Under the pieces are notes generated by a model. The model searched no databases. It had not been told where the DNA came from and was given only the letters and a program-made list of their open reading frames with translations. Shown here in pieces: positions 7,028-59,288 of a stretch of 64,000 nucleotides of DNA (the first letter of the stretch is position 1; each line of letters starts with the position of its first letter). Position numbers and translations under genes: made by a program. The stretch is from Ostrea edulis (Eukaryota), in the NCBI RefSeq assembly GCF_947568905.1, contig NC_079171.1, forward strand, positions 8,804,001 through 8,868,000. Reading direction: 5' to 3'.

Positions 7028-7162
7028 ATGACAACGTCGACCATCGACTCTTCATTTACAGATGCAAACATAATGTGTTCCATTTGTTTCGAAAAAGAAG
7101 TTGAACTGCGAGGTTACGACAAATTCGTCGAATTTGAAATGAAACCGAAAGTTGATTTGTAA
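7028..7162 (+). other. uORF (44 aa) homologous to the TRIM N-terminus
   Basis: MTTSTIDSSFTDANIMCSICFEKEVELRGYDKFVEFEMKPKVDL*. The first 23 aa align to MATSLDSSSMEDVTLCSICFEK. It stops 7 nt before the main ATG. Confidence 0.7.
7141..7152 (+). promoter_or_regulatory. IRF-E/ISRE-like element GAAACCGAAAGT
   Basis: Exact match to the IRF-E consensus GAAA(G/C)(T/C)GAAA(G/C)(T/C), 17 nt before the ATG; conserved in all five paralogues. Confidence 0.6.
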
Positions 7163-7169
7163 TATAAAG

Positions 7170-9031
7170 ATGGCAACATCACTAGACAGCTCTTCGATGG
7201 AGGATGTTACATTGTGTTCTATATGTTTCGAAAAGTTCAAGTCGCCGAGGTTTTTACCGTGTACACATTCTTTCTGTCACGGGTGTTTATCGTCCTACAT
7301 CGTGAGCTTGTGTAAATCTACGGAGACTCGTTTAGGATTTAATTGTCCATTATGCCGTGAGTATACGCCCAGTCCTGGCGCCTTCGATGAGCCAGACGAG
7401 TGGGCGGGGCTTTTTCCTGTGAATGCAATGTTGAGGAAAATTTTAGACAAATCAGACCAATTGCTTTGTGAGCCATGCTTGAGAGAAAAAGAAGAAGAGG
7501 AGGCCTCGGACTACTGCTTTTCATGTTTAGAACATTTATGCAAAATGTGTACGAAGTACCACAGGAAGAATTTGTCGTCACGAGACCACAAAGTATCTCC
7601 ATTGAATGAACTGAAATCGGCGAACAGAAGATCCATTGTTGATATCTCAAACAGCTGTGCCACGCATAAGGATGAAAAAGTTAGGTTATATTGCTTTGAT
7701 AACGAACAGTCCTGTTGCGCAATGTGTGGTGGCATGGAACATAGGAAATGTGAGCAGTTTGATACTATTGAAAATGTTGTACGTGTTTTTAAGGAAAGCG
7801 GCAAGGTTGACTCCATTATGGATGATGTAAACAAGTGTAAAAGTAAATTAGAAAATGCCAAAAACGAAGAAGAGAAGAACATAACGAAAATTCGGTTGAT
7901 GAAATGATAGCAAGATCGGAAGAGGATTTTAAAACTCTCCTTGACCACTTGCAGAAATTGCAACAGGAACATATAGAAGAAATATCCAGTTCTCTGAAGA
8001 AAAGCAAGGAAAAATTGTAAACATGCATAGGCACCTTAACGGACGGAATACAATGTGCAGAGTATTGCAGCAAAATGTTTGAGCAAGCCAGAATCAGTGA
8101 AAATGAAACGGACTTCATGATGAAGTTTCATACGTCAAAAATAACGTACGAACATTTAAAACACGTGAATTTTTCACGAAAGCGCATCATGATTTCCCCA
8201 AAAAAAGATCCTATTTTGACGGAAATCGTGGATATGACAGCTCTTTCTGACGTTCACCATACTGAATCCTCTCGTCAACTTTATTTTGATGTTCGAACTG
8301 TAGAAATGTCTTTGATAAAGGAATTTAGCATTGATGGGGATGTCGTGTGCGATGGTATATTTCTGTCTAATGGCACTTTTGTGATAGCGGATTACAGAGA
8401 TGATGGGAAATGCATGTTTTTTGACAAACATTGGGTCCCCAGTATATTTGGTGAAAGTCTTAAGAAACCATTTGGTTTGATAGAAAACGATGAAGAAGTT
8501 CTTGTGACTTGTAGCGGCTCAAAAAGTATTGAAGTATTTTCTTCATCAGATTTACAGAAACTTCGAAGTATTCCCATGACTGAATCAGTTTCTGGAATAA
8601 CACACCGGAGGGGTGACATATATGTTGCGTGTGGAAAGAAAATCATTAAAATCGATAGCGTGGGTAGGATATTGAAAATATACGATGTAGAAGGGGCAAA
8701 TAATGTAAATATACTTGCAACAAACACTGGACTTATTGTGTACAGTGATTGGAAAATAGAAAAAGTGACAGCGATAACCGATCAGGGAGACATTGTCTGG
8801 AAGTATAAAAATCGTAACCTGAAATGTCCATCTGGAATCGATCAAGACTCTGTCGGTAACATATACGTTACAGGAAGAGATAGCAACAACGTCCACGTGT
8901 TGTCTGGAACCGGGGAACTTATTAGGGTGTTCGAAGACATCCCGAGCCCGACCTTCTTTAAATTAATTGAAGAGAGGGGCATTATATGTGCTTTTGATAT
9001 ATCAAAACGCATAAGAGTGTTTGAAGTTTAA
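7170..9031 (+). pseudogene. TRIM-1: RING-Bbox-Bbox-coiled coil-NHL-like TRIM E3 ligase pseudogene
   Basis: C3HC4 RING (CSIC..CTHSFCHGC..CPLC), two B-boxes and a propeller (LSNGTFVIAD, PSGIDQDSVGNIYVTG). Frameshift near 7889 (apparent 7-nt deletion versus the paralogue IENSVDE) and an in-frame TAA at 8018-8020. ATG 7170 is taken from paralogue alignment. Confidence 0.92.
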
Positions 9032-9077
9032 GTTTCCCAGGAACATGACATTACATTGATTCTGAACAACAACAGTC

Positions 9078-9142
9078 CTATTGTATATTGTATTCCTTAT
9101 AGGAGTTACGAGATTGATCGCTGTTTGTTATCTTCACCTTTC
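9078..9142 (+). mobile_element. Naiad-like retroelement 3' tail fragment
   Basis: 'ttgtattccttataggagttacgagattgatcgctgtttgttatcttcacctt' matches the family tail. Confidence 0.65.
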
Positions 9143-10523
9143 CTATAAAATGTTAGCTGCGCTAATGCAGCCCTCTCCGATTCTTTCTTTCTTTCTTTTT
9201 GAGGGGGCTACAACTCCTTAGGATTTCCGTAATGGTGCAAATGCGAGAGTGATTCACTCCCGCAACATTTTTGATCATTTTAAACATTTGCTGACTTCCT
9301 TTACGTAATTGAAATTATATTCTCTATTTCTTAGTCGATATATGAATTTACAACCTGCAACTTTTCGATGTATTCCAATTTCTTGATTCATATTTGTGTG
9401 CCATCTTTGATGTACTGAAGTTTCAACTTCCAGTTGTCAAATTATTTGCATATGCCATATAAGGTAGTGTTTACATCAATGGACGAGCACGGAGGTGAAA
9501 GCGATTTCGTCGGTATTAAAATATCAAGTTAAAAATCAACAGCAGAGTGTACGTTTTTCGGCCACCACATGATTTGTCCTTTTTTGTCGGAATGACTCAA
9601 GTAACTACATTTTCGCGCTGATTGTCAATGTTGAGGTTTTTCAGTAGATTTACTGACGAGATCTCGCGATAATAAGAATGGCATAGCAAACCAAGAATCT
9701 TGAATGTTGTAAATATATTTCATTAAAAACACCTTTCTCAAACAATAATCAATCAATCATTCAAACATGCCCAAGCACAAAGTCGGTAGTATTTAGTGTG
9801 TAAACAACAGCATTGGATACAAATACAAGGATTTTATTAAAGGTTATTCATTAAAAAAATATTGGCATCATTACGAAGATCTCGTGGACTTCTACCCCTA
9901 TCCTGAAAACGTCTGAATAAAAAAGGAGAGGATTAGATTATTGCAGCATATAAAATGTCAAACAATCTATTTAAAACATTCGTTGCTCATCAAAAACACT
10001 CAGGACATAGCGAATCAAAGTTGATATTGATAGAAATAAAAACATGTGAATTTGATATTAATCTTTTTTCCCGATTTAACCTTTTCAGAATGATTATCAG
10101 GCCCTTCCCTAACCTGTAAAATATGTAATTAAAGTGAATAAAGTATATCTTGACTGTATGTCATTTAACATTCAAAGGTAATTTTATGAAATTAGTCGTC
10201 ACTATTTCTTGGTATCTATTTTTCGCCGAAATATTAACAATTCGTAGTTAGCCATTTACGAAATTTGTCCCTGCATTATGTTTAAGCCCGGACTAAGAAT
10301 GCAAGTTTTATCACTCGTGTATATACTTAGTTTTGCTCAGTCGGAAATATACGATAGAACAATCATATAGACGAAAAGTGACACTGCTTGCTATGAAAAA
10401 TACCATCAAGCCCATGACTCTTGTCCGTTCATACCGTGTTAGAGTTGAAATATCACATCAGAACAAAACGCACGCCATACAAGTGTAAATCAGATGTTCG
10501 TTATCTCCATTTGTTCATTCTTT

Positions 10524-10592
10524 TTAATTAACAACTACAATTAATTAACAACTACAATTAATTAACAACTACAATTAATTAACAACTACAAT
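10524..10592. repeat. 17-bp tandem repeat (ttaattaacaactacaa) x4
   Basis: Four near-perfect copies about 130 nt past the TRIM-2 stop codon. Confidence 0.95.
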
Positions 10593-10720
10593 ACTACAGA
10601 GAATCAAAGTTTCATATTTGTTCTTTATATCCAACATTTGAAGATATAGAAAAAAAATACTATTCTAATGTTCTGCATAAACTTCACTGTCATCACAACA
10701 CTGAGAGAGGAGCGATGGGA

Positions 10721-12625
10721 TTATTTGAATTGGTACACTTTGATGTGTTTTCGATTGCTACACACGCAACATGTATTTCTCGCTTTGTTTATTTTCATAA
10801 AGTCTGGTCTCGGAATGTCCTCAAAAAGTCGAATTAATTTGCCTTCACCGGACAACACATGGACATTGTCACTGGATTTACCAGCGACATAGATATTACC
10901 ATCAGAGTCCGTATCAAGGCCACACGGAGATTTAAGATGTGGACTGTCGTATGTCCACGCGGTTTGACCTCCATCTGTAATCGCTGTTACGACGTGTTTT
11001 TTTCTGTTACTGTATATAATGTGGTTTTTCGTGGCGACGATGTGCTTCACGCCAGTCTCTACACTGTACTCTTTCATTAATCTTTCATACTCGTTTATCT
11101 TCACGATTTTGTCATTGCATGCACAGTATAAGTAAGCATCCTTCTTTGCTATTCCAAAGTTTTTGTGAAGACTGGTGAATATCATATTTGATGATTTGGA
11201 ATAAGAGTAAAGTGATACCCTTTCAATGGATCTTGAACCGTGGCATGCCACTAATAATTCTCGTGCCTTTTCACACAGACCGAAAGGTTCTGAAGACAAG
11301 TCAATGGATCTTGTGCACGCAAACACTTTGTTATAAAAGAAGCATTTACCATTGTTGCTCCTTTTACAACCCCGCCTTTTTGTCGACAGCCATGATAGAA
11401 CGAACTCTCCATTTGATAAAAACGTACCATCACGTACGCAGCCTGCATCAATGCTAAAATGATTTAATAAAGATAACTCAACTCTTCTCAGATCAGACTT
11501 GACATCAAATAGGGACTCTGAAAATACTGCATCAGGAAAACTTTCAAGATCCATGATATCTTCCAAAATAGGATCCTTTCCTTCCTTAAGCCCTATGCGT
11601 ATTTGTGTAAATTCGTAATTTTTGAGTTGTTCAAATATTTTTCTGCTTTTATAGTACTTCACAACCATATCGATGTCATCCTGACTTTTTCTACAATCCT
11701 CAATATTTCTGTAACAGTAATCTGTGCATTGAATTCCATCTGATAGCGTGTCTATGCATTTTTCGTATTTTTCTTTATTTCTCTTTACAGCGGTAGCCAT
11801 TTTTGTTAGATACTCATTTTGCAGATGCTGCAAGTGATCGATAGCAACCCGAAATTCTCTCGTGGTATTCTCTGTAATCTGGTCTGCTTTATCATCCATT
11901 TCTGTAACGAACCTTTCTTGTTCCTTCTTTGCATCTACTAATTTGTTTTCAAGAATATGTATGTCTTCAGACAGGCTGTCGAAATTATGACTAAGAATCT
12001 CTCTGAGAGTCTCAGCAGTTTTCTTTATAGCATCAACACTTTCACATTTTCTGTGTTCCGTACTGACACACATTGCGCAGCATGGCTCTTCGTGATCGTT
12101 GCAAAATAGCTCTAGTTTTCTATCCTGATGTGTTGAACACATATTTTCTCTACCAATTCTCGGTGTAATATTCATTCCTTTCATTTTATTCACTGGTACT
12201 GTCTTATGGTCAAGTGTTGTTAGACTTCTTTTATGATATTTTGTACACAATTTGCACAAATATTCCATGCAAAAGAAACAAAAATCGGTTGCATACTCTA
12301 CTTCGCTCTGTCGTAAGCAAGCCTCGCATTGTGTTTGTTCTGATTCCTGTAAAAGTTTTCCTAATACTTCGTTTTCAGGGAAAAGTTCTGCCCACTTCTC
12401 TGGCTCACCCAAGGCATTATCAATGGGAATGTACTCACGGCATAATGGACAATTAAATCCCAAACGAGGCTCCGTAGATTTACACACATTATCAATGTAG
12501 GAAGATAAACACTTGTGACAGAAGGAATGTGTACACGGTAAAAACCTCGGCGACTTGAACTTTTCGATACATATCGAACAAAATGTAACATCCTCCGTTG
12601 TAGAGCTGTCTAGTGAAGTTGCCAT
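10721..12625 (-). CDS. TRIM-2: intact RING-Bbox-Bbox-coiled coil-NHL-like TRIM E3 ligase (634 aa), inverted relative to paralogues
   Basis: Uninterrupted ORF from ATG 12625 (MATSLDSS...). RING, B-box1 (CEAC..CFFCMEYLCKLC..H..H), B-box2 (CSTH..CNDH..CAMC..HRKC), coiled coil, and NHL-like repeats (SPCGLDTDSDGNIYVAG). Confidence 0.95.
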   Translation of the reverse strand: MATSLDSSTTEDVTFCSICIEKFKSPRFLPCTHSFCHKCLSSYIDNVCKSTEPRLGFNCPLCREYIPIDNALGEPEKWAELFPENEVLGKLLQESEQTQCEACLRQSEVEYATDFCFFCMEYLCKLCTKYHKRSLTTLDHKTVPVNKMKGMNITPRIGRENMCSTHQDRKLELFCNDHEEPCCAMCVSTEHRKCESVDAIKKTAETLREILSHNFDSLSEDIHILENKLVDAKKEQERFVTEMDDKADQITENTTREFRVAIDHLQHLQNEYLTKMATAVKRNKEKYEKCIDTLSDGIQCTDYCYRNIEDCRKSQDDIDMVVKYYKSRKIFEQLKNYEFTQIRIGLKEGKDPILEDIMDLESFPDAVFSESLFDVKSDLRRVELSLLNHFSIDAGCVRDGTFLSNGEFVLSWLSTKRRGCKRSNNGKCFFYNKVFACTRSIDLSSEPFGLCEKARELLVACHGSRSIERVSLYSYSKSSNMIFTSLHKNFGIAKKDAYLYCACNDKIVKINEYERLMKEYSVETGVKHIVATKNHIIYSNRKKHVVTAITDGGQTAWTYDSPHLKSPCGLDTDSDGNIYVAGKSSDNVHVLSGEGKLIRLFEDIPRPDFMKINKARNTCCVCSNRKHIKVYQFK

Positions 12626-12642
12626 TTTTCTATCACAATTCA

Positions 12643-12654
12643 ACTTTCGCTTTC
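12643..12654 (-). promoter_or_regulatory. IRF-E/ISRE-like element GAAAGCGAAAGT
   Basis: Exact IRF-E match on the minus strand, 17 nt before the TRIM-2 ATG. Confidence 0.6.
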
Positions 12655-12663
12655 AGTTCGAAT

Positions 12664-12762
12664 TCAGCGTACCCGTTTTAGCCTCGGCGTTATAAATTTT
12701 CCGAAACAAATGGAACACCCCGTGATGTCTGTAAATGAAGTATCGATTGTAGACGTTGTCAT
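12664..12762 (-). other. uORF (32 aa): truncated duplicate of the TRIM N-terminus
   Basis: MTTSTIDTSFTDITGCSICFGKFITPRLKRVR* aligns without gaps to MATSLDSSTTEDVTFCSICIEKFKSPRF (13/28 identical, hand count). Confidence 0.8.
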
Positions 12763-12945
12763 TGCTGACAAGAAAATAAACCATAAATTCACTGCCCTTG
12801 TATATTAAGAGTCTAATGCACCGTCCTTCCCATGAGAATCATTGGACAAAACGTGCATTCACACTGATAAAAGTGCAACGAGTTATAAAACAAGTATGTT
12901 ACGTAGATCTCTGCCCGGAAGTATAGTATTCGGGAACATGGAAGC

Positions 12946-12990
12946 CTATGTCGGACATAAGTAATTTAGATAGGAGATTAAAGGTTTAAA
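12946..12990 (-). promoter_or_regulatory. Predicted 3' splice site of the TRIM-2 5'UTR intron
   Basis: Minus strand ttatgtccgacatAG|gcttccatg is homologous to the acceptor motif of the other paralogues. Confidence 0.55.
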
Positions 12991-14666: not shown

Positions 14667-14737
14667 AAGGTGAATATAACGAACAGTGATCAATCTCATA
14701 ACTCCTATAAGCAATACAATGTAGATAGTTGGCATGA
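14667..14737 (-). mobile_element. Naiad-like retroelement 3' tail fragment
   Basis: 'aaaggtgaatataacgaacagtgatcaatctcataactcctataagcaatac' is the same terminus as at 25255 and 47503. Confidence 0.7.
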
Positions 14738-15195: not shown

Positions 15196-15251
15196 GCCAC
15201 AGCAATCCGGAGTTACTTGGGTACACAGCTTTGACCCATCCTAAAAATGTG

Positions 15252-32954: not shown

Positions 32955-33180
32955 CTTCCATGTTCATGACACTATGCTTTCTATTAAGGGTCTACGCCAC
33001 AGTCTTGTCCCGTGACCCGTGGTACAGTGTGAATGAAAGTTTTCTCCCATAATCTCTTTCCACAGGAAGGACAGTGAAATTATTAGTTTGGTATGTGCTT
33101 GACAATAGTTCATTTATAGACATTACGGTGTGTTCCATTTGTTTTCGAAAATTTAGACGCCGATTCGCCGGATTTGAAAT

Positions 33181-33192
33181 GAAAACGAAAGT
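33181..33192 (+). promoter_or_regulatory. ISRE-like element GAAAACGAAAGT
   Basis: GAAANNGAAAGT, 19 nt before the ATG. Confidence 0.55.
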
Positions 33193-33211
33193 TGATTTGT
33201 CATTTATAAAC

Positions 33212-35086
33212 ATGGCAACATCCTTAGACAGGTCTTCGATGAAGGATGTTACATTGTGTTCTATATGTTTCGAAAAGTTCAAGTCCCCGAGGTTTTTACC
33301 GTGTACACATTCCTTCTGTCACGGTTGTTTATCTTCCTACATTGTTAATGTGTGTAAATCTACAGAGTTTCGTTTGGGATTTAATTGTCCATTATGCCGC
33401 GAGTACATACCCTGTCCTGGTGCATTCGATACGCCAGATGCGTGGGCGGGGCTATTTCCGTTGAATGAAGTTTTAGAGACAATCGTTAAGAAACCTGATG
33501 GGAAATTGTGTGATGCCTGTTTACGAGAAAACGAAAGTGAAAATGCTATCGGGTTTTGCTTGTCTTGTACTGAATATTTATGCAAGGTGTGTACCAAATA
33601 TCACAAAAGGCAATTGCTCTCAAGAGATCATACCATATGTCAACTAAACGAGATGAAATCTGGCAACATATTTCCCGAATCAGGGAATATCCATAGCTGC
33701 CCAAAACATAAAAGGGAAACTGTCAAATTCTTCTGTAATGATCACCAGCAGTCCTGTTGTTCAGTGTGTATAGGAATAAGTCACAGAAAATGCGAAAGTA
33801 TTGATACTGTTGAAGATGCAGCAAAAAATATAAAACAAAATCGCCAACTGGATGTTCTTTTAGGTGATATGAAGAACGTGGAAAAGAAACTGACAAAAGC
33901 AAAGAGCGAACAAGAGATATATGTAGCAGAAATAGAGAATTCAGTGGACGAAATCATAGAGAAAACAGAAAGGGAATTCAAGGAACTTGTTGATCACCTA
34001 GACATACTGAAGAACAAACATTTAGATGAGGTAGCAGATGCGCTGAAGAAAGGAAGGGGGAAGTTAAGTGAATGTACAAATGTACTTACTAATGGTATAC
34101 AGTGTACAAATTACTGCTGCCGGAATATTGAAAGAGTTAAAGAGACGGAGAATGACGCTGAAATGGTGATGACGTATTACAGAGTGAAAGAGAGGCTCTT
34201 ACAGCTGAAACGGTTTAAATGCACGAAGAAACAGATAACGATATCTGAAAAAAAGTCACAAGTTTTGAAAGAAATGAGAAATATGGAATCTTTTGGAGAT
34301 GTTGAATATGCTGAGTCTGATCGTCGCATCACGTACGATGTAAATGACATTGCGTTATCTTTAGTTAATGAATTCAGCATTGATGGAGAAAATCCGATTG
34401 TGTGGACTGGGGATTTTCTGTCCAATGGTAACTTTGTATTTGCAGATTACATACCTGATGGACGTTGTTTTATTTATAACAAAGACTGGAAACCCACGGA
34501 AGTCATTGATGGACTGAGTTACCCTTTTGAAGCAATACAAGCTGGAGAAGAACTACTGGTGACGTGTGATGGAACGAAGTCTATAGAAGTTTTTTCTTTG
34601 TCTGATTTACAGAAACTGCGAAGTATCAAAATCAACGAAACAATGTATGGAATAACACAACACAATGGAATTTGTTATGTAGCATGTGGAAATAAGATTA
34701 TAAAATTCAATCTGTCTGGTAAAAAACTTAGAGAATATAAAGTCGAAGGCAATTACAATATTCACATAAGTACAACAAAAGATGGACATATTGTGTACAG
34801 TAACTGTTCCCTGAATAGAGTAACCGCCATCACGGACCAGGGAGACACCGTGTGGCAGTATAAACATATCAAAATGAGAGTACCCCGTGGACTTGATGTA
34901 GACTTTGTCGGTAATATCTTTGTTGCCGCTAGAGGAAGTGACAATATCCACGTGTTGTCTGGCGCTGGCTGTCTCGTTAGGATTATCGAGGATATTCCAC
35001 AGCCAATGTTTATTAAACTAATGGAAGAGAGGAGTATATGTTGTGTGTGTAGCAATCGTAGAATCATGAAAGTGTATAAATTGTAG
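33212..35086 (+). CDS. TRIM-3: intact RING-Bbox-Bbox-coiled coil-NHL-like TRIM E3 ligase (624 aa)
   Basis: Uninterrupted ORF from ATG 33212 with all zinc ligands present. An in-frame ATG at 33179 could add MKTKVDLSFIN. AATAAA lies about 20 nt after the stop. Confidence 0.95.
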   Translation: MATSLDRSSMKDVTLCSICFEKFKSPRFLPCTHSFCHGCLSSYIVNVCKSTEFRLGFNCPLCREYIPCPGAFDTPDAWAGLFPLNEVLETIVKKPDGKLCDACLRENESENAIGFCLSCTEYLCKVCTKYHKRQLLSRDHTICQLNEMKSGNIFPESGNIHSCPKHKRETVKFFCNDHQQSCCSVCIGISHRKCESIDTVEDAAKNIKQNRQLDVLLGDMKNVEKKLTKAKSEQEIYVAEIENSVDEIIEKTEREFKELVDHLDILKNKHLDEVADALKKGRGKLSECTNVLTNGIQCTNYCCRNIERVKETENDAEMVMTYYRVKERLLQLKRFKCTKKQITISEKKSQVLKEMRNMESFGDVEYAESDRRITYDVNDIALSLVNEFSIDGENPIVWTGDFLSNGNFVFADYIPDGRCFIYNKDWKPTEVIDGLSYPFEAIQAGEELLVTCDGTKSIEVFSLSDLQKLRSIKINETMYGITQHNGICYVACGNKIIKFNLSGKKLREYKVEGNYNIHISTTKDGHIVYSNCSLNRVTAITDQGDTVWQYKHIKMRVPRGLDVDFVGNIFVAARGSDNIHVLSGAGCLVRIIEDIPQPMFIKLMEERSICCVCSNRRIMKVYKL

Positions 35087-44523: not shown

Positions 44524-44888
44524 AGTGTTGCGAACATTATAGACCCCAACGTACAGGGAGGACAGTATCACTATTTAATTATCTAGAATTCAAACATTTA
44601 GATAGATCTATACTCGGCCTTAAATTGTCTCAATCTTAAAAAAAAATCCCTTTATAAGATAGACATATTATATTCCAGTAATAGATAAACATTGAAAAAT
44701 ATAGATGTTTACATATTTGATAGAATTCAAACCTTAACAAATTCAAATTACACTTATTTATGTCCCGCATAGGTTTCCATGTCCCTAGAAATTGTCCCGT
44801 TTCTACACGCCGAGGTTGGCTTCGGATATTTTACACTCTGGATCTACAAGGAGGACAGTGAAATATATGCTTTATGTGCTTGTTGGCA

Positions 44889-44936
44889 ATGACAATGTGT
44901 ACAATCGACACTTCATCTACAAACACCACAGTGTAA
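44889..44936 (+). other. uORF (15 aa) MTMCTIDTSSTNTTV*
   Basis: Homologous start and position to the uORFs of TRIM-1, TRIM-2 and TRIM-5. Confidence 0.6.
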
Positions 44937-44996
44937 TATTCCATGGTTTAAAAAAATAGAACGCCGAGGTTAAAGCGGGTTCGCCGAATTTGAAAT

Positions 44997-45008
44997 GAAA
45001 CCGAAAGT
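44997..45008 (+). promoter_or_regulatory. IRF-E/ISRE-like element GAAACCGAAAGT
   Basis: Exact IRF-E match, 17 nt before the ATG. Confidence 0.6.
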
Positions 45009-45025
45009 TGATTTGTAATATAAAG

Positions 45026-46898
45026 ATGGCAACATCACTAGATAGTTCTTCGATGGAGGATGTTACATTGTGTTCTATATGTTTCGAAAAGTTCAAGTCG
45101 CCGAGGTTTTTACCGTGTACACATTCCTTCTGTCAAGGTTGTTTATCTTCCTACATTGTTAATGTGTGTAAATCTACGGAGCCTCGTTTGGGATTTAATT
45201 GTCCATTATGCCGCGAGTACATACCCTGTCCTGGAGCCTTCGATAAGTCAGACGAGTGGGCGGGGCTATTTCCGTTGAATGAAGTTTTAGAGGCAATCGT
45301 TCATAAGCCTGATGAGAAACTGTGTGATCCCTGTTTGCGAGATAACGAAAATGAAAATGCTACGGGGATATGTTTGTCATGTACTGAATATCTATGTAAA
45401 ATATGCACGAAACATCACAAAAGACAACTGCTCTTAAAAGACCATATCGTATGTCAATTGAACGAGATGAAATCCGGTAACGTAATTCCCTCATCAGGAA
45501 ATACCCACGGTTGCCCTGAACTTAAAAAAGAAACAATCAAATTCTTCTGTAACGATCACCAGCAGTCCTGCTGTTCGTTGTGTATTGGAACAAGTCACAG
45601 AAAATGGGAAAGTATTGATACTGTCGAAGTTGCGGCAAAACATTTAAAAGAAAATGGCCAACCGGATGTACTTTTTGGTGATGTGAAGAACCTGGAAAAG
45701 AAACTGACAAAAGCAAAGAGCGAGCAAGAGAAGAATGTAGCAGAAATAGAGAACTCAGTGGACGAAATCATAGAGGAAACAGAAAAGGAATTCAAAGAAC
45801 TTGTTGATCACTTAGAAATGCTGAAGAACAGACATTTAGATGAAGTAGCAGGTGCGCTGAAGAAAGGAAGGGGGGGAGTTGGGTGATTGTACAAATGTAC
45901 TTACTGATGGTATACAGTGTACAAAATACTGCTGCCGGAATATTGAAAGAGCTAAAGAGCCAGAGAATGACGCTGAAATGTTAACTACTTATTACAGAGT
46001 GAAAGAGAGGCTCTTACAGCTTCAACAGTTTAAATTCACGAAGAAACAGATAACGATATCTGAAAGAAAGTCACAAGTTCTGAAAGAAGTGAGAAATATG
46101 GAATCTTTTGGAGATATTGAATATGCTGAGTCTGATTTTCGCATCACATACGATGTACATGACATTGCGTTATCTTTAGTTTCTGAATTCAGCATTGATG
46201 GAGGAAATCCGAATGTGTGGACTGGGAATTTTCTGTCGAATGGTAACTTTGTAGTTGCAAATTGCAAATCTAATGACACTTGTTTTATTTATAACAAAGA
46301 CTGGAAATCCACGGAAGTCATTGATGGACTGAGTACCCCTTTTAAAGCAATAAAAGCCGGAGAGGAACTACTGGTGACGTGTTCTGGAACGAAATCTATT
46401 GAAGTTTATTCTGCGTCTGATTTACATAAACTGCGAAGTATCAATATAAACGAATATGTGTATGGAATAACAAAACACAATGGAGCGTGTTATGTAGCAT
46501 GTGGAAATAAAATCATAAAAATTGATATGTCCGGTAAAAAACTGAAAGAATATAAAGTTGAATGGGGTACTATTAACATAAGTACAACACAACATGGACA
46601 CCTTGTGTACAGTAACCATCCCCGTAATAGAGTAACCGCAATCACTGATCAGGGAGACACCGTCTGGCAGTATACACATCTGAAAATGATAGAACCCCAT
46701 GGACTTGATGTAGGCTATATCGGTAATATCTTTGTTGCCGCTAGAGGAAGTGACAATATCCACGTGTTGTCTGGCGCTGGCAGTCTCATTAGGATTATCG
46801 AGGATATTCCACAGCCAGTGTTTATTAAACTAATGGAGGAGAGGAGTATGTGTTGTGTGTGCAGTGGTTGTAAAATCATGAAAGTGTATAAACTGTAG
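45026..46898 (+). pseudogene. TRIM-4: frameshifted TRIM-NHL paralogue (probable pseudogene)
   Basis: A 7-G run at 45870-45876 where 6 G would keep the frame. B-box2 zinc ligands are also changed (CPEH>CPEL, HRKC>HRKW). Otherwise very similar to TRIM-5. Confidence 0.8.
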
Positions 46899-50837: not shown

Positions 50838-53550
50838 TTGGGGTTCTTTTTGAAGTATGCATGGAAAGTAAATGAATGACATCGTTGAATGACGTCGCGA
50901 TTATTTAATTGTAACATTGTTTGTTAAAAACTGCTGCTTTGATGGATTTCTTCTCTTTTTAAAATCAAACTTTGGTATCATTTTTTTTATAAAACGAACT
51001 CGACACCCCCCCCCCCCCCCCAAGGCAAAAAAAAAATCGCTTTGATACTAATATTAACAAAATTAACAGCACCCAAATTCTGCCTATTTTAAGTTGAATC
51101 ATGCAATGAATTATCAATGAATTATCAATCACTTATGTTCTATATAATTCAATGGAAAACAGTGCCATTGCCGTTAAAACAATGGTATGTTGAAACCGGA
51201 ATTACTAAAAAAAAAAAAGCTGTGCTGTTGAATGAAAAACAATTTTCACAGAATTGCATATACATTGTCAAGATACATCGGTCCAATTTTCAGGTGGGGT
51301 TTTCGAGTGAGTAAAAAAGGTCTAAACCCACGACCTACGTTAAATCGCCAGGTTTTGATTGATACAAAAACAAGTAAGTAAATCAGCATTCAAGGAGAAT
51401 GGAAATACAAAAACTGGTTATCATCTCACTGTATTGCGTTGCTTGCACGTTGACGATGCGGTGTTAAAATAGGATTTTTCTGTTCACAAACTTCTCAATA
51501 TCACAAAGCTGTAAAAAGGCGTCAGGAACATTTTTCTTGTCTCCAAATATTATGGGCGGCACTAAACGCCGCTATGGTGCCGTATTGGAGTAGTAACATG
51601 TTAAAGAGTCAATATCTGCAGTGATATACAATATTCGTTTTCAAAATTTTAACATCTTTGAAACAAGAGCTATCATAATATACGTAGGTGTACAAGTTGA
51701 TACGACGAAAACTATTGATAAAGCGTCCAGGAACGAGGCGGCGGATTGAACTAATAACATATAACTTTTAAAGGAGTCCTTGTATGTCTTTATTTGGTAA
51801 TCAAATAATCCATTTTTGGACCAAGGACTATCAGTTTGGGTGATGTAATGAAGAACAAATGAGGGGATGTTGTGCTGAAATACAGTGCAGTCCTATAATA
51901 ATTCACATGTATGGTCTGAAATATTCATTCTTGTGTCCATGTTGATTGGCTCATCTTGTGGCTACACAGTATTTACGACATTGGTACATTTTACATGCCT
52001 TGATGTATGAATTCATAGAAAACAATCTACGCGCTTTAAAGACCAGGGGCGCGTTTTACAATAGAAATTACGACTTACGACAAAACTTTACATACTGGAA
52101 TTTTCAGGTTTATTGTCAGGTCATTCACTCCAACTGAAAAATTTTTTTTTCTAAATGTTGAAAATTAAGCCTCAGAAAAGTTTTACTTCATTCACTTAAA
52201 GTAATAAATGTGTAATACAATTTAAGACTTGCGACTTTGCCGTAAGTTGATTTGTAAAACGTAGCACAGAATAGTGGATCTATCGTACGGATATACAAAT
52301 CTATATTTGTAACGTGCAAGGTCTCCCGTGACACGGACCTCCGTTTTAAGGTCATGTCGGAGAGATCCGTGGTCCTTCTAAATGCAGAACGTTTTGGGAA
52401 AGAGCAGGCATCATCTATGTTTACGTCTTGGGCTTGACTTCCCGGTTACGAAGTGAAAGCTCTACCACTGAGCTACTGCGACCGGTATCAAATCGATTTT
52501 CTCATAAGATACACAATATTACTTTAAAAACTATATTACATAGAATGTCTTAGATATATATTGATCAATCAAATTCATCAGGAAATTCAGAAAACCCGTG
52601 CTTGCGTCTCATACTTCCTTCGCGTTTCACAAATGGGTCTAGAGTGTTGAAATTGATAAAATTGTGTACGAATTACATGTGAAAGGTGATATAAAGGGCT
52701 ATGTATTTATCAAAAATCATGCTATCGGGATATAGGTACTATCTTTCAAACAAATGAAGTAGGCAAAGACATGAAATGACAGAGAAGACGAGTTTGAATC
52801 AGCGACTTCAACACTGTAGACCCACCCGTGACACGTGAAGTGTACGGGTACCGGTTTCTGAAATTCGGTGACAAATTTGATTGATCAAGATGTATGTACG
52901 ATAATGTTTGCAATATGATTTTTGCAGAATTATTTTATATCTCATTGCCAATGTGTATTTAGAGGGATCTACGGAATGAGAATTCAGAATCGGATATGAA
53001 GCATGTGAAGTCTAAGTGTTGTACAAGTAATCATATCTAATCCCAACAAGGGGAATGTATTACAAATCTCAGTACATTACTCACACTTGAACACCAAATC
53101 AAGGTGAGGGGAGGGGGGCTAACAATAATAGGGGAGACAATGCCTAATGTGTTTTCCGTTACAGGTGTCCGAATCGATTGCCAGTGTTTCAGACATAATG
53201 ACCTCCTCAAGGGTGTCACAGTAGACATTAGTAAGATGAAGGCGACTCGCCCCTACTGTCATGGATATCTTGTTTGGCATTGTAAAGACGTCAAACTATA
53301 TTACCGAAGTCATCTTCACAAGTCAACGGTTATTGATTCGTTACCTCGCATAACAGGGGCTTAGCGCGTTTCTGGGCCCGAATACAATAAACGGTATCAC
53401 AAGAGTTTAGGCCCAAATCGGGCTTAGCCTCTATGCTTCGCACTAACCCTTGACATCAGTCGCTATATAAAAGTTGGGCTCATTTAGATCATTACACAAC
53501 CCACTATAGATAAAACATCCAATGAATTCATTGCATCTTGTTATGGTATA
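50838..53550. repeat. Segmental duplication block B (paralogous to 1-2795)
   Basis: Collinear with block A; the match ends exactly where the Gypsy LTR begins (53551). Confidence 0.93.
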
Positions 53551-53616
53551 TGTAATGTACTTTGTCAAAGCCGTGCCATGTTTGTCTCAGTACTTTATTC
53601 CTTGGTTTTGAGGAGC

Positions 53617-55189
53617 ATCCTAGATCTTTTCCTTTGACATAAACAAGACGAAACTCATACGGTTGTAGTTTCAACATCATCTTCTGAATACGCATTGGTG
53701 CAGATGTCATTGGTTTGGGCATGATAGTTTCTAGCGGTTTATGATCAGATTCAATTGTAATATTGGTTTTACCGTACCAAAGTTTATGGAATTTCTCACA
53801 TCCACAAACGACTGCAAGTAATTCCTTTTCGATCTGGACGTAACGCTGCTCTGCAGGGGTCAGGGCTCTAGAGGCATACGCAACAACTCCCTTCTGCTGA
53901 AGAACAGCGGCACCTAGTCCCTTCATAGATGCATCCACACTGAGAATTACTGGTTGGCTGATGTCAAAGTATCTAAGAACTTTAGTTGAAGTAAGTGCTG
54001 TTTTCACATTCTCGAATGATTGTTCTGCTTCCGAAGTCCAATTCCAATCATCACTGGTCTTCAGAACTCTGAGAGGTGCGTTCAACTCACTCAGATTAGG
54101 AATGAACTTAGCAACATACGCTAGCATTCCAAGTACTGTTTCCAATTCTGCATGATTTTCTGGCGCTCTCATCTCGGTGATTGCTCTAATACGTTCCGGA
54201 GTAGGTTTTAGTCCTTCACCTGTCAATAAATGGCCTACATAGTTCACTTCACTTTTAGCTAGAACACACTTGCTTTTGTTAAGTTTCAAGTTAATGGCCT
54301 TAACCCGTTCAAGTACAGTTCGCAACCGACTGTTGTGTTCCCCTTCATCACGACCATGTACCAGAATACCGTCCATAACAACTTCAACACCATCTATGTT
54401 TCCAAAGTGATTGATCATTTCACGCTGAAATACTTCTGCTGCACATTTCAGTCCCATCGGCATGCGAAAATAACGGTAACGTCTGAAAAGATAGCTTAAT
54501 CTGGAAGTAGCCCATGTTTGCGTCCAAAGTTGAAAATATCTGGCTTCCATGAACTCGGGTGACTATATCGTCTATAGTGTTCATAGGGAAATGCTCACGC
54601 AGCAGAGCTCTGTTCAAGTCAGTAGGGTTTAAACAGATCCTTACGCGTCCATTCTTCTTGCGCACACATACCATGCTGCCAACCCAACTGGTTGGTTCTG
54701 TCACTGTTGCAATGATGTTACATTTAACTAAGTGGTCAAGTTCTTTTTTCACATCGTCTCGCATTGCAACTGGTAATGATCTTGGTGCATGAACAACAGG
54801 TTCCACAGAGTTGTCTACCTTGATATCATATTCTCCTGGTAAACAACCAACACCGTCTCCCACTACGTCTGAGAATTCTTGAAGGAGTTCGCTGACAGAC
54901 AAACTAACACTGTTCACTATTTTCACTCGTGTAATGAGACCAAAATGCAAACAATCTGGTCTCCCTAGTAGACTGATGTGTTTGGGTGTGTCCATAATCT
55001 TGAATGTTAAGTTGCGAAACAGAGTTTTGTACCTACAGGGCAATGTTATTTCACCGTGCACTTTTGTAGGGTTGCCACACACATCATGGATAACAGTACT
55101 GCTCACACGAATTACAAAAAAACTGAAGTGAGTCATTGAGCTATCGATTTTGAAATAATGTTGCATCTGGGTCCACTGTCAATTTCTAA
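53617..55189 (-). pseudogene. Gypsy pol remnant (protease, RT, RNase H), disrupted
   Basis: Protease LEIDSGPRCNII read in frame after the TAA at 55190. RT motifs RICLNPTDLN, FSTLDANMGYFQI, RMPMGL, with YxDD mutated to VMDG. RNase H motifs VDASMKGLG, EKELLA, SDHKPL. Frameshifts at ~55140 and ~54500. Confidence 0.88.
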
Positions 55190-56269
55190 TTACAGTGGTA
55201 ATCCTTGTACATCAACAGTAACAGTCCATTCACTGTCATCACTCGAGGCAACATGTACTGTTTCATATGAGTTCTCCATGAATGCTGTATAACACTGCTG
55301 AACCATGCTCTGATCAAAAATGTCACATACATCCTCCCCTTGTTCTTGACAGTCTGAATAATGAACATGGCGCTTTGAATGTTTGTTAGTTCCGCGTCCA
55401 CGACGTGATTGTCCTCTGTGTTGTTGAGAATATTGCGAGTGACCTTTACACAGTGGTGAGGCTTTGTAATGTCCTTGTATGCCACACTCGTTGCATGTTT
55501 TGTTGAAGGCTGGGCATTGACGAAAAGCATGATGCTTAGTGCATTTCTTACAGTACGGGTGTTTCCCTTGATATCCAGGTCCGGGTTTCTGCTTCGACTT
55601 GGATGAACCAGCATTATTCACTGTCGGACTTTCAGTAAGAGTGTCAACATGTGCTTTGGTTAGCTCTACTTGCCTACATGTTTGTATGACCTTGGCTAGT
55701 GTCAAATCAATAGCAGGAATTTCCATAAGTTTTTCTGTACACTTACGGTCATTAACCCCATTAATGATCATGTCACAAATAAAGCCTTCGCGTTGATCGC
55801 CATACTCACAGAATTCAGCCTTCTTCTTCAGTTCAGAAATGAAGTCCATTATGGTTTTATTTCCACGCTTTCTGTTCAAGAATTCTTGCCGTTTAATGTT
55901 TCTCTAATTGTGCACACCATAATGTCTATCAAACTTGCGAAATACAGTTGTCAAATCGTGTCTGTCCTCGACCGGAACTGCTTCGATGCCTTCTCCCGGA
56001 TCAGCTTCAACTTCCGGTGCCCATGTAAACGAATCATAAATCTTTATAGCCTCACGTCCCATGTTAGCAAGTAATACTCCTACCCTGCGTTTTCCAGGTT
56101 TGTCATCAAGACCAAGCGCGTCGAGATGAATCAAGAATGACCGTTGGTAGGCATCCCATTCCTGAGCTGTCGTGTTTGGGTCACTGGGGTTAAATTCAGG
56201 CAAAATTCTGAGCAAATGTGTTGACATGGCGTCCTTGTCTTTCGATAGAAAATGTCCCAAGAGTTTCAA
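55190..56269 (-). pseudogene. Gypsy gag (frameshifted) with CCHC-type knuckles
   Basis: ..EWDAYQRSFLIHLDALG..LLANMGREAIKIYDSFTW; ELKKKAEFCEYG..DMIING; CKKC..H..C and CNEC..GH..C. Confidence 0.85.
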
Positions 56270-56437
56270 AAGTTATTCGCCACTTCCTCGTGAGCGGATG
56301 GCGACAGATACACACGATATCCGCACTTCTAGCACCATGTAATGTACTCTGTCAAAGCCGTGCCATGCTTGTCTCAGTATTTTATTATCTCCTGTACTCG
56401 AGAGTTACACAAAACAATAAACAGATCGTACACATAA

Positions 56438-56549
56438 CTAACAACTCAACTGTATGACAAACGGGATGATTTCAACTTCTCCATCGTCAACTTCCCACAT
56501 TTATGTAGCAATATTCCATTATCACCTGCATATGGTGTTTATACATCTC
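56438..56549 (+). mobile_element. Internal Naiad-like RT fragment truncating the Gypsy 5' LTR
   Basis: Translates LTTQLYDKRDDFNFSIVNFPHLCSNIPLSPAYGVYTS, matching the ORF at 25477-25896. Confidence 0.85.
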
Positions 56550-57151
56550 TAGTTTAGGTCCCCTACACGTTTGTCAATCCAGTGTTCTACGAGACAAACG
56601 CCTAGGAGCATTCTACGATAAACATTTACACTCCATAACAAGGCTTATCCAAATTCTGATAAAGCAGCTGATTGGTTGATGCATAACGATGACGGACGCA
56701 GTCGAACAGAAGATAAACAAAGTTTTATCGAATTCTCGCTGAAACCTTTACAGAAAGTGTGTTTACTTAAATTAGCAAATAGGTCAGACGTGTTGGCAGT
56801 ATTACCAACAGGCTATGGGAAATCGCTATTGTATACGATTCTACCGCAATTAATGCTTGAAGAAGACCTGCATAGTAATACAAGTTCTCGTGAAGTCAAC
56901 ATAATTCCGGTCATATCGCCACTGGTTTCTCTAATGAAGAACCAAGTTTCGAACTTGCAAAAACACAACGTTTGCTTTCTTGAGAACAAGCGACTCATAA
57001 ACTGACATTTGGAACAACAGCTGTGGTGTTTGTTTTCTTCGGTGTCACCATTTCCGTTTTTCGATAGCGCCCCCTCGCGTTGTAATATTTTCAAATAGAA
57101 CGCTCCAAGGCGTTTGATTAGGAAGTCAAACGCCTTGCGTTACCTAGGCTA
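56550..57151 (+). mobile_element. Deletion derivative carrying a RecQ-type helicase N-terminus (AcademH-like)
   Basis: ORF 56676-57005 has motif I LPTGYGKS and motif Ia VISPLVSLMKNQV. Ends TAG...CTA with degenerate inverted similarity (tag..taggt..cgtttg). No TSD found. Confidence 0.55.
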
Positions 57152-57230
57152 ATGTCATAGTTTTGTCCCGTTTCTGGAGACATTTTCAGTGTGACTATAT
57201 TCTGCACATTGATGTCAGTGGCGGATTTAA

Positions 57231-57750
57231 AGGGACTGATTCACGATTTTCTCCAAAATTTCATTTTTCACTTTTAATGATCAAAATCTACTGTATAATA
57301 TGTTTAAAAGATTTTACATAAAAAGTAAAGTTATACATCATCACAGAAGCCCATTTTAGAGAGTTCATTATTTGTTTTGTAAACAAAGATATCGGTATGT
57401 TACTGTTTACGAAATTTTCAAAAGAAATAGATATCGATCTAAGTTTATTATAACTTTCACATTTCAAGCATTCTTCGGATGAAATGTTTCATCTAAAAGT
57501 TAAAATGTGCGACTATGCAATATCAAGATGCTTTATATTACAACATTGATATTTCACATGTTTGTTTGTATACATAAAAAGACTCGAGTCTTTGTTTATA
57601 TAACGCATATTTAAGGCTAAAATATAGCTTTTATTCTTGCAATCCGAAGGTTAAAATTTTGGTTGTCAACATTAAATGAGTTATACTTTTAATATTAAAC
57701 ATCAAAAATAAAAAAAAAATAATTTGTTCAAAAGTCGTGAACCAGTCCCT
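57231..57750. mobile_element. TTAA-targeting (Kolobok-like) MITE, 520 bp
   Basis: TIR agggactg(a/g)ttcacga with TTAA duplicated; the empty site ggatttaagggcgg is seen at ~44077. Confidence 0.9.
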
Positions 57751-57940
57751 TTAAGGGCGGACCCCCTCCCCCCTCTTATTTTTTTTTCAAATTTAAGGTA
57801 AATCGTATTTAGAAAAATGTAAACGATAAAAGAAGTAGTAGTTTCTTCCACTCTTGGGGGAATAAATGACAAAATCTTTTGATTCACTGAATTACTTTCA
57901 ATGGGAGAATTTACGTTATTTTTCTGCCACAAACCCTTAA

Positions 57941-58528
57941 AGCTGTATGGTCCAAATTACAATATTTTTTCCATCTCGTAAAAACGCTATTAAATCATCC
58001 CACACATGTAGTTATGAGGCTGTATGACATGTCATAAATTATTTCACCTGTTTTAACCCAAATTATTTGATTTTAAATCGATCTTTACAAATAACCGTGT
58101 CACTCTGCCATTTCAAGTGACAGTCACGTGACCAGTTCAAACTTTCAGATCATCGGTGGTCTTATCTGTGCAAAGCTGTGCAACAGTACCGTACCATAAG
58201 TATAATAAAAATAAAAACATCAAATACCTCTTAGTAATTCGTTGTTTTACGCTCTTTCAGCCTTAAAACTAGACAGTTGCGTATGAGTTAATACATCATG
58301 TTGGGATTCCCCTGACGCACGTGCATCTATTTATAGACGTCTATTATGGGATGATTTATATATGTACCCACTAAATTTACTTTCTAAATAATATTCGCAC
58401 TGGTTTTTTTTACATGCAGATGTTTTCAAGCATGTAATTAAGGGAAAGTTAATAACTTTATAAAAGAATTAATCTGCTTTAAAGCAATTATGTACAAAAA
58501 TAATACATGAACATCGGGTCATACAGCT
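57941..58528. mobile_element. TTAA-targeting (Kolobok-like) MITE, 588 bp
   Basis: TIR agctgtatg..cc with TTAA duplicated; the empty site aaacccttaatgttagcg is seen at ~44270. Confidence 0.9.
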
Positions 58529-59168
58529 TTAAAATTAGCGCAATTTTATTAACTTTACCTTATTAGATGTAAAAATGACAGAAAATAGTAGAAATTACTA
58601 CATAGGAGATATATTTCAAACCTTATAAAATTTGTAAAATCAAGCCGGGACCTCACGCGGGCTTCGCCCCCTGGACTTCCATCAGGGCTTTGTCCTTGAC
58701 CCACTGATGGCCTCATGGCGGCCCGAAGCCTCATAAAAAAGTTGCGCCCTCCTAACCGGAATTCCTGGATCCGCCACTAAATGTTGCGAAGATTCTACAA
58801 GGAGGACAATATCACTATTTAATTGTTATTTCTAGTGTTTATATTTAACAGGATCCAAACCTTTAGATAGACTATACTCCGCCTTAAATGGACTCAATCT
58901 TGAAAAAAATCCTTTATAAGATAGAAATATATCCGAGTAATAGATAAACATTGAAAAATATATATGTTTACATGCTCAATATTTGATAGAATTCAAACCT
59001 TAACAAAATCAAATTGCACTTATTTATGTCCCGCATAGGTTTCCATGTCCTTACAAACTACGTCATAATCTTGTCCCGTTTCTACACCCCGAGGTTAGCT
59101 GCGGATATTTTACACTCTATATCAAGAAGGAGGACAGTGAAATGTTTCCTTTATGTGCTTGTTGGCAA

Positions 59169-59216
59169 TGACAACGTGGACAATCAACACTTCATCTACA
59201 GACATCACAGTTTAAT
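59169..59216 (+). other. uORF (15 aa) MTTWTINTSSTDITV*
   Basis: Homologous to the uORFs of TRIM-1, TRIM-2 and TRIM-4; coordinates approximate. Confidence 0.55.
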
Positions 59217-59276
59217 ACTCCATTGTTTCAAACAAATAGAACGCCGAGGCTACAGCGGGTTCGCCGAATTTGAAAT

Positions 59277-59288
59277 GAAACCGAAAGT
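59277..59288 (+). promoter_or_regulatory. IRF-E/ISRE-like element GAAACCGAAAGT
   Basis: Exact IRF-E match, 19 nt before the ATG. Confidence 0.6.

What the first reader, a model, noticed from the sequence alone, without database searches (positions are those of the whole stretch)
7141..59288. Every TRIM-NHL paralogue carries an IRF/ISRE site 17-19 nt before its ATG: a candidate IRF-responsive invertebrate TRIM array
Seen: GAAANNGAAAGT at 7141, 12643 (minus), 33181, 44997 and 59277, at 17, 17, 19, 17 and 19 nt from the start codon. Both GAAA half-sites and the trailing GT are invariant, while the NN spacer varies (CC, GC, AC, CC, CC); flanking bases differ in the divergent inverted TRIM-2. Known: this is the IRF-E/ISRE consensus, many vertebrate antiviral TRIMs are interferon-stimulated, and oysters have IRF factors and a poly(I:C)-inducible antiviral response. 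Inference: the cluster is a co-regulated antiviral E3-ligase array, and the site acts as an intragenic enhancer or alternative promoter. Caveat: gene conversion of the 5' region could preserve the motif without selection.
Basis: partly seen in the sequence, partly recalled or inferred. Interest (0 to 1): 0.82.

Follow-up and report, generated by a model that had tools for sequence, protein, structure and literature searches.

The report
IRF-like site before oyster TRIM genes
Every copy of a flat-oyster TRIM ubiquitin-ligase gene family examined carries the same 15-base interferon-regulatory-factor-type DNA motif just before its start codon, and it is kept more strictly than the surrounding DNA, which makes it a credible but untested switch for an antiviral gene array.

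Summary
The window is Ostrea edulis OX387711.1, about 8.804-8.868 Mb. GAAANNGAAAGT lies 17, 17, 19, 17 and 19 nt before the ATG of five RING/B-box/NHL-type TRIM genes, two of them frameshifted. A sixth match lies inside the T3 coding sequence.

All 11 paralogues sampled over about 400 kb have the motif. The invariant core is TGAAA-N-CGAAAGTTG: 14 fixed positions, plus one spacer base that changed four times.

The 5' module (-330 to +300) diverges far less than the gene body. Even against that local background the core stands out (about 5e-5), and it is the only such noncoding window of 315.

A near-identical core, in inverted orientation, lies 31-44 nt before the ATG in four distant relatives (two Crassostrea gigas, two unassigned contigs), an enrichment of about 1e-3. 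Six Saccostrea relatives lack it.

The sequence fits the IRF core AANNGAAA/ISRE, and published work shows oyster IRFs act on ISRE. I found no RNA, transcription-start, binding or induction evidence.

Best reading: a selected cis-element, probably IRF-bound (about 0.45). The "intragenic enhancer or alternative promoter" idea is unsupported. An unchecked note from this scan (s1-279193) reports the same motif on adjacent DNA.

The parts
7140..7154 (+).
12641..12655 (-).
33180..33194 (+).
44996..45010 (+).
59276..59290 (+).
7170..9031 (+). T1: RING/B-box/NHL-type TRIM gene, frameshifted near 7886-7892. Divergent clade shared with L006:10001
10721..12625 (-). T2: intact 634-aa TRIM, 45% identical to T5. 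Divergent clade shared with L006:15431
33212..35086 (+). T3: intact 624-aa TRIM. The upstream frame is open from 33074 because the mini-uORF stop is lost
45026..46898 (+). T4: TRIM gene, frameshifted near 45871-45876
59308..61182 (+). T5: intact 624-aa TRIM. The public gene call is a 477-aa product starting at an internal Met (59749)
58978..59307 (+). About 330 nt of 5' flank shared by all three paralogue clades (T5 copy; equivalents lie before T1-T4). It contains a decayed duplicate of the first ~30 codons at about -140 to -46, then the core block
59275..59298 (+). Seven-codon mini-uORF (MKPKVDL-stop) overlapping the core. Its start is CTG in T2/L6b and its stop is lost in T3
33527..33538 (+). 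Sixth match to the motif, inside the T3 coding sequence; subclade-specific and a coding by-product

Best explanation
The 15-nt block TGAAA-N-CGAAAGTTG, 17-19 nt before the start codon, is a double-stranded-DNA cis-regulatory element kept by purifying selection in the 5' leader or proximal promoter of an oyster-specific TRIM-NHL subfamily. Its sequence is an IRF-E/ISRE-type site: two GAAA half-sites two bases apart, ending in GAAAGT. The most likely binders are oyster IRF1/2/8-type factors, which would tie the array to the dsRNA- and virus-triggered IFN-like response.

Shown here: sequence identity, selective conservation within O. edulis, and recurrence in distant relatives. Inferred: IRF binding, inducibility, and the position of the element relative to the transcription start.
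For: 1. All 11 O. edulis paralogues sampled across 8.46-8.87 Mb carry the site at -29 to -31. They include clades only 45-60% identical in protein.
2. Fitch counts on the CDS tree show 14 columns with no change, flanking one spacer column with 4 changes. This is the only one of 315 noncoding 15-nt windows with at most 1 variable column.
3. The fraction of invariant sites is 0.13-0.17 at -330 to -46 and 0.49 at third codon positions of codons 1-100. Even at 0.49, the chance of 14 invariant sites is about 5e-5.
4. Inter-clade identity of the core is 0.93-0.97, against 0.71-0.75 for local synonymous sites and 0.59-0.77 for the rest of the flank.
5. The variation pattern is not that of a coding sequence. 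No third-position change occurs in the K, K and V codons of the overlapping mini-uORF, while its start (ATG to CTG) and stop (TAA to TGA or TCA) do vary.
6. I scanned 84 kb of distant relatives' loci with the O. edulis core on both strands. Two of 4 hits at up to 2 mismatches, and 7 of 125 at up to 4 mismatches, fall in the 1.2% of sequence lying within 100 nt before a TRIM ATG (P about 8e-4 each).
7. AANNGAAAGT occurs in 3 of 10 distant genes' -150 windows (P about 1e-3).
8. Four relatives have [TC]AAAC-N-GAAA[GA] on the opposite strand, 31-44 nt before the ATG. Two of them belong to C. gigas clusters, LOC105346970 and MID2-like. A flipped orientation fits a protein binding double-stranded DNA and does not fit an RNA element.
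9. Literature: IRFs recognise AANNGAAA, and C. gigas IRF1 keeps the GAAA-contacting residues (PMC7819612). CgIRF2 and CgIRF8 activate an ISRE reporter (PMC5557890). CgIRF1 is reported to bind ISRE and activate the CgIFNLP promoter (PMC13524488). TRIM families are prominent among OsHV-1- and poly(I:C)-responsive genes (PMC6971885, PMC7064767).
Against: - There is no expression, transcription-start, binding or induction evidence. No run on record as RNA holds T5, and only one tiny RNA run holds 5% of T3's words. The four runs laid were genomic DNA.
- A site 17-19 nt from the ATG is probably inside the transcribed leader, which is unusual for a promoter ISRE.
- The invariance includes the 5' T, the second spacer C and the 3' TG, none of which the IRF consensus requires.
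- The 5' module (-330 to +300) is homogenised or younger than the gene body: third-position identity is 0.71-0.75 against 0.42-0.44. Part of the conservation is therefore passive.
- Six Saccostrea relatives lack the element, and no distant relative has the full GAAANNGAAA, only a single AANNGAAA core.
- The relaxed patterns used were chosen after I had seen the data. The scan used the pre-defined core.
- The frameshifted copies T1 and T4 keep the site.
- Other factors that read GAAAGT-type sites, such as PRDM1/Blimp-1-like proteins, cannot be excluded.
Confidence: 0.45

Rival explanations
1. Passive conservation. The motif is carried along because the 5' module (-330 to +300) has been homogenised by gene conversion, or was exchanged among paralogues recently. 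It has no function of its own.
For: Between the three clades, third-codon-position identity is 0.71-0.75 in codons 1-100 but 0.42-0.44 in the rest of the gene. The 5' flank stays alignable (0.59-0.77) while the 3' flank does not (0.32-0.39). The tree for -45 to +299 is three times shorter than the tree for the gene body. Frameshifted copies keep the site.
Against: Measured against that same local background, the chance of 14 invariant sites is about 5e-5. The spacer base in the middle changed four times, even between sister copies, so the local mutation supply is not low. The tree topologies of the 5' module and the gene body agree. Conversion within O. edulis cannot explain the same core before the ATG of C. 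gigas and other relatives.
Confidence: 0.2
2. A DNA element bound by a different factor, or a core-promoter or start-site element. Candidates include a PRDM1/Blimp-1-like or other GAAAGT-reading protein. The match to the IRF consensus would then be coincidental or only partial.
For: The invariant bases extend beyond the IRF requirement: T before the first GAAA, C at the second spacer position, TG after GT. Distant relatives keep only one AANNGAAA core plus GT(T). The fixed short distance to the ATG (17-19 nt in O. edulis, 31-44 nt in the relatives) suits a position-dependent promoter element. From memory, the Blimp-1 consensus overlaps IRF sites of the GAAAGT type; I did not test this here.
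Against: Position-dependent core-promoter elements are normally orientation-specific, yet the element is inverted between Ostrea and the Crassostrea-type relatives. The free first spacer base flanked by two fixed GAAA units is the classic IRF-E pattern (PMC7819612, PMC7177527).
Confidence: 0.2
3. An RNA-level element of the 5' leader. Either the 7-codon mini-uORF (MK[P/T/A]KVDL-stop), or a protein- or structure-binding site, tunes translation of the TRIM open reading frame.
For: Eight of 11 copies have an intact ATG...TAA mini-uORF ending 8-10 nt before the main ATG. The site probably lies in the transcribed leader.
Against: The uORF start is CTG in T2/L6b and its stop is lost in T3, so start and stop are less conserved than the interior. 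There is no synonymous-type variation, and the one freely varying base is a first codon position. The RNA fold is no better than shuffled sequence, z = 0.53. In distant relatives the element lies on the opposite strand, which would give a different RNA.
Confidence: 0.12

Closest known systems
Vertebrate IRF-E/ISRE elements of interferon-stimulated genes, including ISG-type TRIM genes
   Same: Two GAAA half-sites two bases apart, with a free spacer base and a trailing GT or CT. The element sits next to the start of E3-ligase genes from a multigene family linked to antiviral defence. From memory, the widely used human ISG15 ISRE core differs from the commonest O. edulis version by one base; I did not check this here.
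   Different: This is an invertebrate without canonical interferon or ISGF3. The site is 17-19 nt from the ATG and probably in the leader. No binding or induction has been shown. The invariance extends to bases outside the consensus.
Oyster and shrimp IRF targets described so far: CgIFNLP promoter/ISRE reporters for CgIRF1/2/8, and the shrimp Vago promoter
   Same: Invertebrate IRFs recognise vertebrate-type ISRE sequences (PMC5557890, PMC13524488, PMC4602278 by title and abstract).
   Different: Those are single cytokine-like genes tested by reporter or binding assays. Here a whole TRIM-NHL array shares the site, and the evidence is comparative only.
PRDI-type sites shared by IRF1/2 and PRDM1 (Blimp-1)
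   Same: A GAAAGT-ending half-site preceded by an A-rich stretch.
   Different: No PRDM1 data exist for oysters. The resemblance is recalled from memory, not tested.
Conserved regulatory uORFs in 5' leaders
   Same: A short ORF ends a few bases before the main ATG in most copies.
   Different: Its start and stop are not conserved in all copies, there is no codon-type variation, and the element is inverted in relatives.

Membership tests
IRF-E / ISRE cis-element | Sequence: AANNGAAA core, two GAAA units as GAAANNGAAA | tested here: met
   Exact in 11 of 11 O. edulis copies. Consensus taken from PMC7819612 and PMC7177527. Distant relatives keep one AANNGAAA core only.
IRF-E / ISRE cis-element | Half-sites constrained and spacer free, i.e. 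conservation above background | tested here: met
   14 invariant columns around a spacer column with 4 changes. P is about 5e-5 against local synonymous sites. It is the only such window of 315. The second spacer base is also invariant, which the consensus does not need.
IRF-E / ISRE cis-element | Lies in a promoter or enhancer of the regulated gene (position relative to the transcription start) | tested here: inconclusive
   No RNA reads or transcript contigs could be obtained, so the transcription start is unknown.
IRF-E / ISRE cis-element | Bound by an IRF protein | not testable with these tools
   The literature shows only that C. gigas IRFs act on or bind ISRE (PMC5557890, PMC13524488). 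Whether O. edulis has IRF genes was not checked here.
IRF-E / ISRE cis-element | Confers induction by virus, dsRNA or an IFN-like signal | not testable with these tools
   No usable RNA run was found. TRIM families in general are among the responsive genes in C. gigas (PMC6971885, PMC7064767).
TRIM-NHL proteins | N-terminal RING finger | tested here: met
   zf-C3HC4 and zf-RING_UBOX score above cut-off in all five.
TRIM-NHL proteins | B-box zinc finger(s) | tested here: met
   zf-B_box scores above cut-off in T2, T3 and T5 and just below in T1 and T4. A second, ANCHR-like B-box hit scores below cut-off.
TRIM-NHL proteins | Coiled coil after the B-boxes | not tested
   No coiled-coil prediction was run.
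TRIM-NHL proteins | C-terminal six-bladed NHL beta-propeller | tested here: inconclusive
   Hits are weak: NHL in T1 (21.3 bits against a cut-off of 20), and sub-threshold SBBP, Vgb_lyase and Mala_s_1. Sequence hits to PDB chains include Pizza/PknD NHL designs (1e-8) and TRIM2/TRIM3 NHL (7e-4 to 4e-3). No structure was predicted.
Regulatory uORF | Start and stop codons conserved in all copies, with peptide-type (synonymous) variation | tested here: not met
   CTG start in T2/L6b, stop lost in T3, no synonymous changes.

The most novel reading that the evidence does not exclude
An ISRE-type element has been maintained, with a flip of orientation, in the immediate 5' leader of a lineage-specific TRIM-NHL subfamily across oyster genera (Ostrea and Crassostrea-type). 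It would mark a whole tandem array of E3 ligases as an IRF-driven, interferon-stimulated-gene-like regulon in an animal without interferon. Because it lies in a 5' module that moves between paralogues, new copies would inherit inducibility automatically.
Probability: 0.3. Interest if true: 0.72.

Novelty: new member of a known kind. Interest (0 to 1): 0.55.

Why it matters
Oysters mount a poly(I:C)- and virus-inducible response, and TRIM families dominate the responsive gene sets. Almost no native cis-elements of that response are known: oyster IRFs have mostly been tested on human ISRE reporters.

This finding offers a precisely located 15-nt element that is selectively conserved and matches the IRF consensus. 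It sits in front of at least 11 paralogues, and a counterpart lies before the ATG of C. gigas relatives. That gives a directly testable native IRF target and a marker for finding the molluscan "ISG-like" regulon.

It also shows a mosaic mode of evolution in these arrays: a homogenised 5' module (flank, RING and first B-box) joined to a fast-diverging propeller.

Tried and rejected
- RNA evidence. Two run searches (T5, T3) found no real RNA holder. The single read-laying run showed that runs X3-X6 are genomic DNA contigs, so neither the transcription start nor expression could be read. Those runs showed no variant inside the T5 motif, but the test has little power.
- Metagenome scan for more relatives. 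It returned only one useful bivalve contig (L018); the others are remote RING proteins.
- RNA structure. The fold of -78 to +38 is no better than shuffled sequence, so I rejected it.
- uORF peptide selection. Rejected because start and stop vary and there is no synonymous-type variation.
- A splice acceptor (TTTACAG at about -110) implying an upstream non-coding exon. I considered this, but that stretch is simply the decayed duplicate of codons 6-11, and without RNA it stays open.
- A TATA box at -11 to -4. It is not conserved in T2/L6b, L5 or L1a, so I rejected it.
- The internal motif at 33527 as a second regulatory site. Rejected because it is clade-specific coding sequence.
- Literature look-ups for the two C. 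gigas relatives by accession found nothing. I also found no paper on O. edulis IRFs or on TRIM induction in O. edulis.


Full report
**What is there**

The window has no N. It lies on Ostrea edulis chromosome record OX387711.1, assembly GCA_947568905.1, at about 8,804,001-8,868,000. I derived this from the position of the 477-aa product P0004.

The window holds five intronless paralogues with RING, B-box and a C-terminal NHL-type propeller:
- T1, 7170-9031 (+), frameshifted near 7886-7892.
- T2, 12625-10721 (-), intact, 634 aa.
- T3, 33212-35086 (+), intact, 624 aa.
- T4, 45026-46898 (+), frameshifted near 45871-45876.
- T5, 59308-61182 (+), intact, 624 aa.

The copies are far from uniform. 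Against T5, T2 is 45% identical in protein, T1 is 60% and 46% in its two pieces, and T3 is 80%.

**Checking the observation**

GAAANNGAAAGT occurs six times against 0.33 expected. The sixth, 33527-33538, is inside the T3 coding sequence and is shared only by its closest relatives.

The start codons are genuine. M1-A2-T3 is invariant in an alignment of 12 oyster relatives.

I fetched six more O. edulis paralogues from 8.46-8.80 Mb of the same chromosome. All 11 copies carry the motif at -29 to -31. In the window, the extended core TGAAANCGAAAGTTG has five exact matches and nothing similar elsewhere, apart from two unrelated two-mismatch hits.

**Is it more than shared descent?**

The paralogues share about 330 nt of 5' flank. 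Positions -140 to -46 are a decayed tandem duplicate of the gene's first ~30 codons.

On a tree built from the gene body there are three deep clades. Parsimony change counts per column are as follows:

| Region | Changes per column | Invariant columns |
|---|---|---|
| -330 to -46 | 1.0-1.2 | 13-17% |
| -45 to -1 | 0.53 | 60% |
| Third codon positions, codons 1-100 | 0.87 | 49% |
| Third codon positions, rest of gene | 1.45 | 12% |

Between clades, synonymous-site identity is 0.71-0.75 in the first 300 nt and 0.42-0.44 afterwards. The 3' flank is unalignable at 0.32-0.39. The whole 5' module (-330 to +300) has therefore been homogenised or is younger than the propeller part.

Within this module, however, the core is exceptional:
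- Fourteen columns show no change, around one spacer column that changed four times, even between sister copies.
- It is the only noncoding 15-nt window of 315 with at most one variable column.
- Using the most conservative local background (49% invariant), 14 invariant sites have a probability of about 5e-5. That is about 0.002-0.015 after allowing for 45-330 window placements.

**What kind of constraint**

The core overlaps a seven-codon mini-uORF (ATG AAA NCG AAA GTT GAT TTG TAA) present in 8 of 11 copies. Three points argue against it as the target of selection:
- Its start is CTG in T2/L6b, and its stop is lost in T3.
- The one freely varying base is a first codon position.
- No synonymous change is seen.

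The region does not fold better than shuffled sequence, z = 0.53. The pattern of two fixed GAAA units with a free base between them is what a DNA-binding protein of the IRF type would impose (PMC7819612, PMC7177527).

**Other species**

I collected ten more distant relatives, 42-54% identical in protein: six from Saccostrea cucullata and S. echinata, two from C. gigas clusters, one metagenome bivalve contig and one unassigned Logan contig.

None has the full 12-mer. Scanning their 84 kb on both strands with the O. edulis core gives these results:
- Two of four hits at up to 2 mismatches, and 7 of 125 at up to 4 mismatches, fall within 100 nt before a TRIM ATG. That zone is 1.2% of the sequence, so P is about 8e-4 in each case.
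- AANNGAAAGT occurs in 3 of 10 genes' -150 windows, P about 1e-3.
- Four relatives carry [TC]AAAC-N-GAAA[GA] on the opposite strand, ending 31-44 nt before the ATG.
- The six Saccostrea genes lack it. One has a one-base-insertion look-alike at about -95.

The inversion argues for a double-stranded-DNA element and against an RNA element. The Saccostrea absence shows the element is not universal in the family.

**Mechanism**

Best reading, at about 0.45: a selected IRF-E/ISRE-type site bound by oyster IRFs, coupling the array to the IFN-like antiviral response. The published support is:
- IRFs recognise AANNGAAA, and C. gigas IRF1 keeps the GAAA-contacting residues (PMC7819612).
- CgIRF2 and CgIRF8 activate an ISRE reporter and are induced by poly(I:C) and OsHV-1 (PMC5557890).
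- CgIRF1 is reported to bind ISRE (PMC13524488).
- TRIM families are prominent among responsive genes (PMC6971885, PMC7064767).

Binding, inducibility and the position relative to the transcription start are all inferred, not shown. No RNA run holds these genes, and the runs I laid were genomic DNA.

The public 477-aa gene calls that start at an internal Met may reflect RNA reads that cannot be placed uniquely in the near-identical 5' module. That is an inference.

The rivals are passive conservation through conversion (0.2), a different DNA-binding factor or a core-promoter element (0.2), and an RNA or uORF element (0.12).

**Comparison and novelty**

The element works like a vertebrate IRF-E/ISRE. 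Membership is met for sequence and for selective conservation, and untested for binding, induction and promoter position.

ISRE-driven TRIM genes are well known in vertebrates, and invertebrate IRFs are known to act on ISRE. A native, array-wide, cross-genus element in molluscs appears not to have been described in the papers I could search. I therefore file it as a new member of a known kind, with moderate interest because it is directly testable.

An unchecked first-reader note of this scan reports the same motif before four more TRIM copies about 10 kb past the window's end (s1-279193). That fits the array-wide picture but is not independent evidence.

Noticed in passing
window 7031-7125, 12670-12765 (-), 33085-33165, 44887-44980, 59167-59262 (approximate): A decayed tandem duplicate of the first ~30 codons ('shadow' RING start, with its own ATG and CSICF-like codons) lies at -140 to -46 before every TRIM copy. 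In T1 it reads as a 46-codon uORF. In T3 the frame stays open into the main ORF, from 33074.
   Followed up: partly
all 11 paralogues; window genes T1-T5: Mosaic divergence. The 5' flank plus the first 300 nt of CDS (RING and first B-box) has inter-clade synonymous identity of 0.71-0.75, while the rest of the gene is saturated at 0.42-0.44. The 5' module looks converted or exchanged, joined to a fast-diverging propeller.
   Followed up: partly
window about -170 to -159 before each ATG (for example 59138-59149): The second most conserved upstream block, GGACAGTGAAAT, contains a CAGT initiator-like core and a GTGAAA unit. It could mark the transcription start or a further IRF half-site. Another conserved block (CATAGG-TTCCATGT) lies at about -305.
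   Followed up: no
window 53528-55879 (-): Three broken ORFs; the ORF at 53528-54550 has reverse transcriptase and RNase H domains, the other two match no Pfam family. This looks like a degraded LTR-type retrotransposon fragment between T4 and T5.
   Followed up: no
window 57000-58670: Genomic DNA contigs pile up here at depths hundreds to thousands of times those over the T5 gene, with many alternative joints. This is a high-copy repeat just upstream of T5.
   Followed up: no
window 61235-61363 (+): A 47-residue fragment duplicating the last residues (578-624) of the TRIM protein lies right after the T5 stop codon.
   Followed up: no
window 59749-61182; L004:1-1316; L001:20350-21315: Public gene calls for several copies are N-terminally truncated (477 or 321 aa, starting at internal Met codons), although the full 624-aa frame is open from the conserved MATS start.
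   Followed up: partly
window 56676-57005 (+): An isolated 109-aa ORF with a DEAD/DEAH-box helicase N-terminal match (E 4e-7). It could be an exon or a transposon fragment.
   Followed up: no
window 799-813 and 51629-51643 (-): The same 15-mer (a two-mismatch look-alike of the core) occurs at two places away from TRIM starts. It is probably part of a dispersed repeat.
   Followed up: no
L013:9154 (-) and L013:10001 (+); L012:7152 (-) and L012:10010 (+): In Saccostrea the relatives sit head-to-head, 0.85-2.9 kb apart, next to a coronin-like WD40 gene. The layout is conserved between S. cucullata and S. echinata.
   Followed up: no
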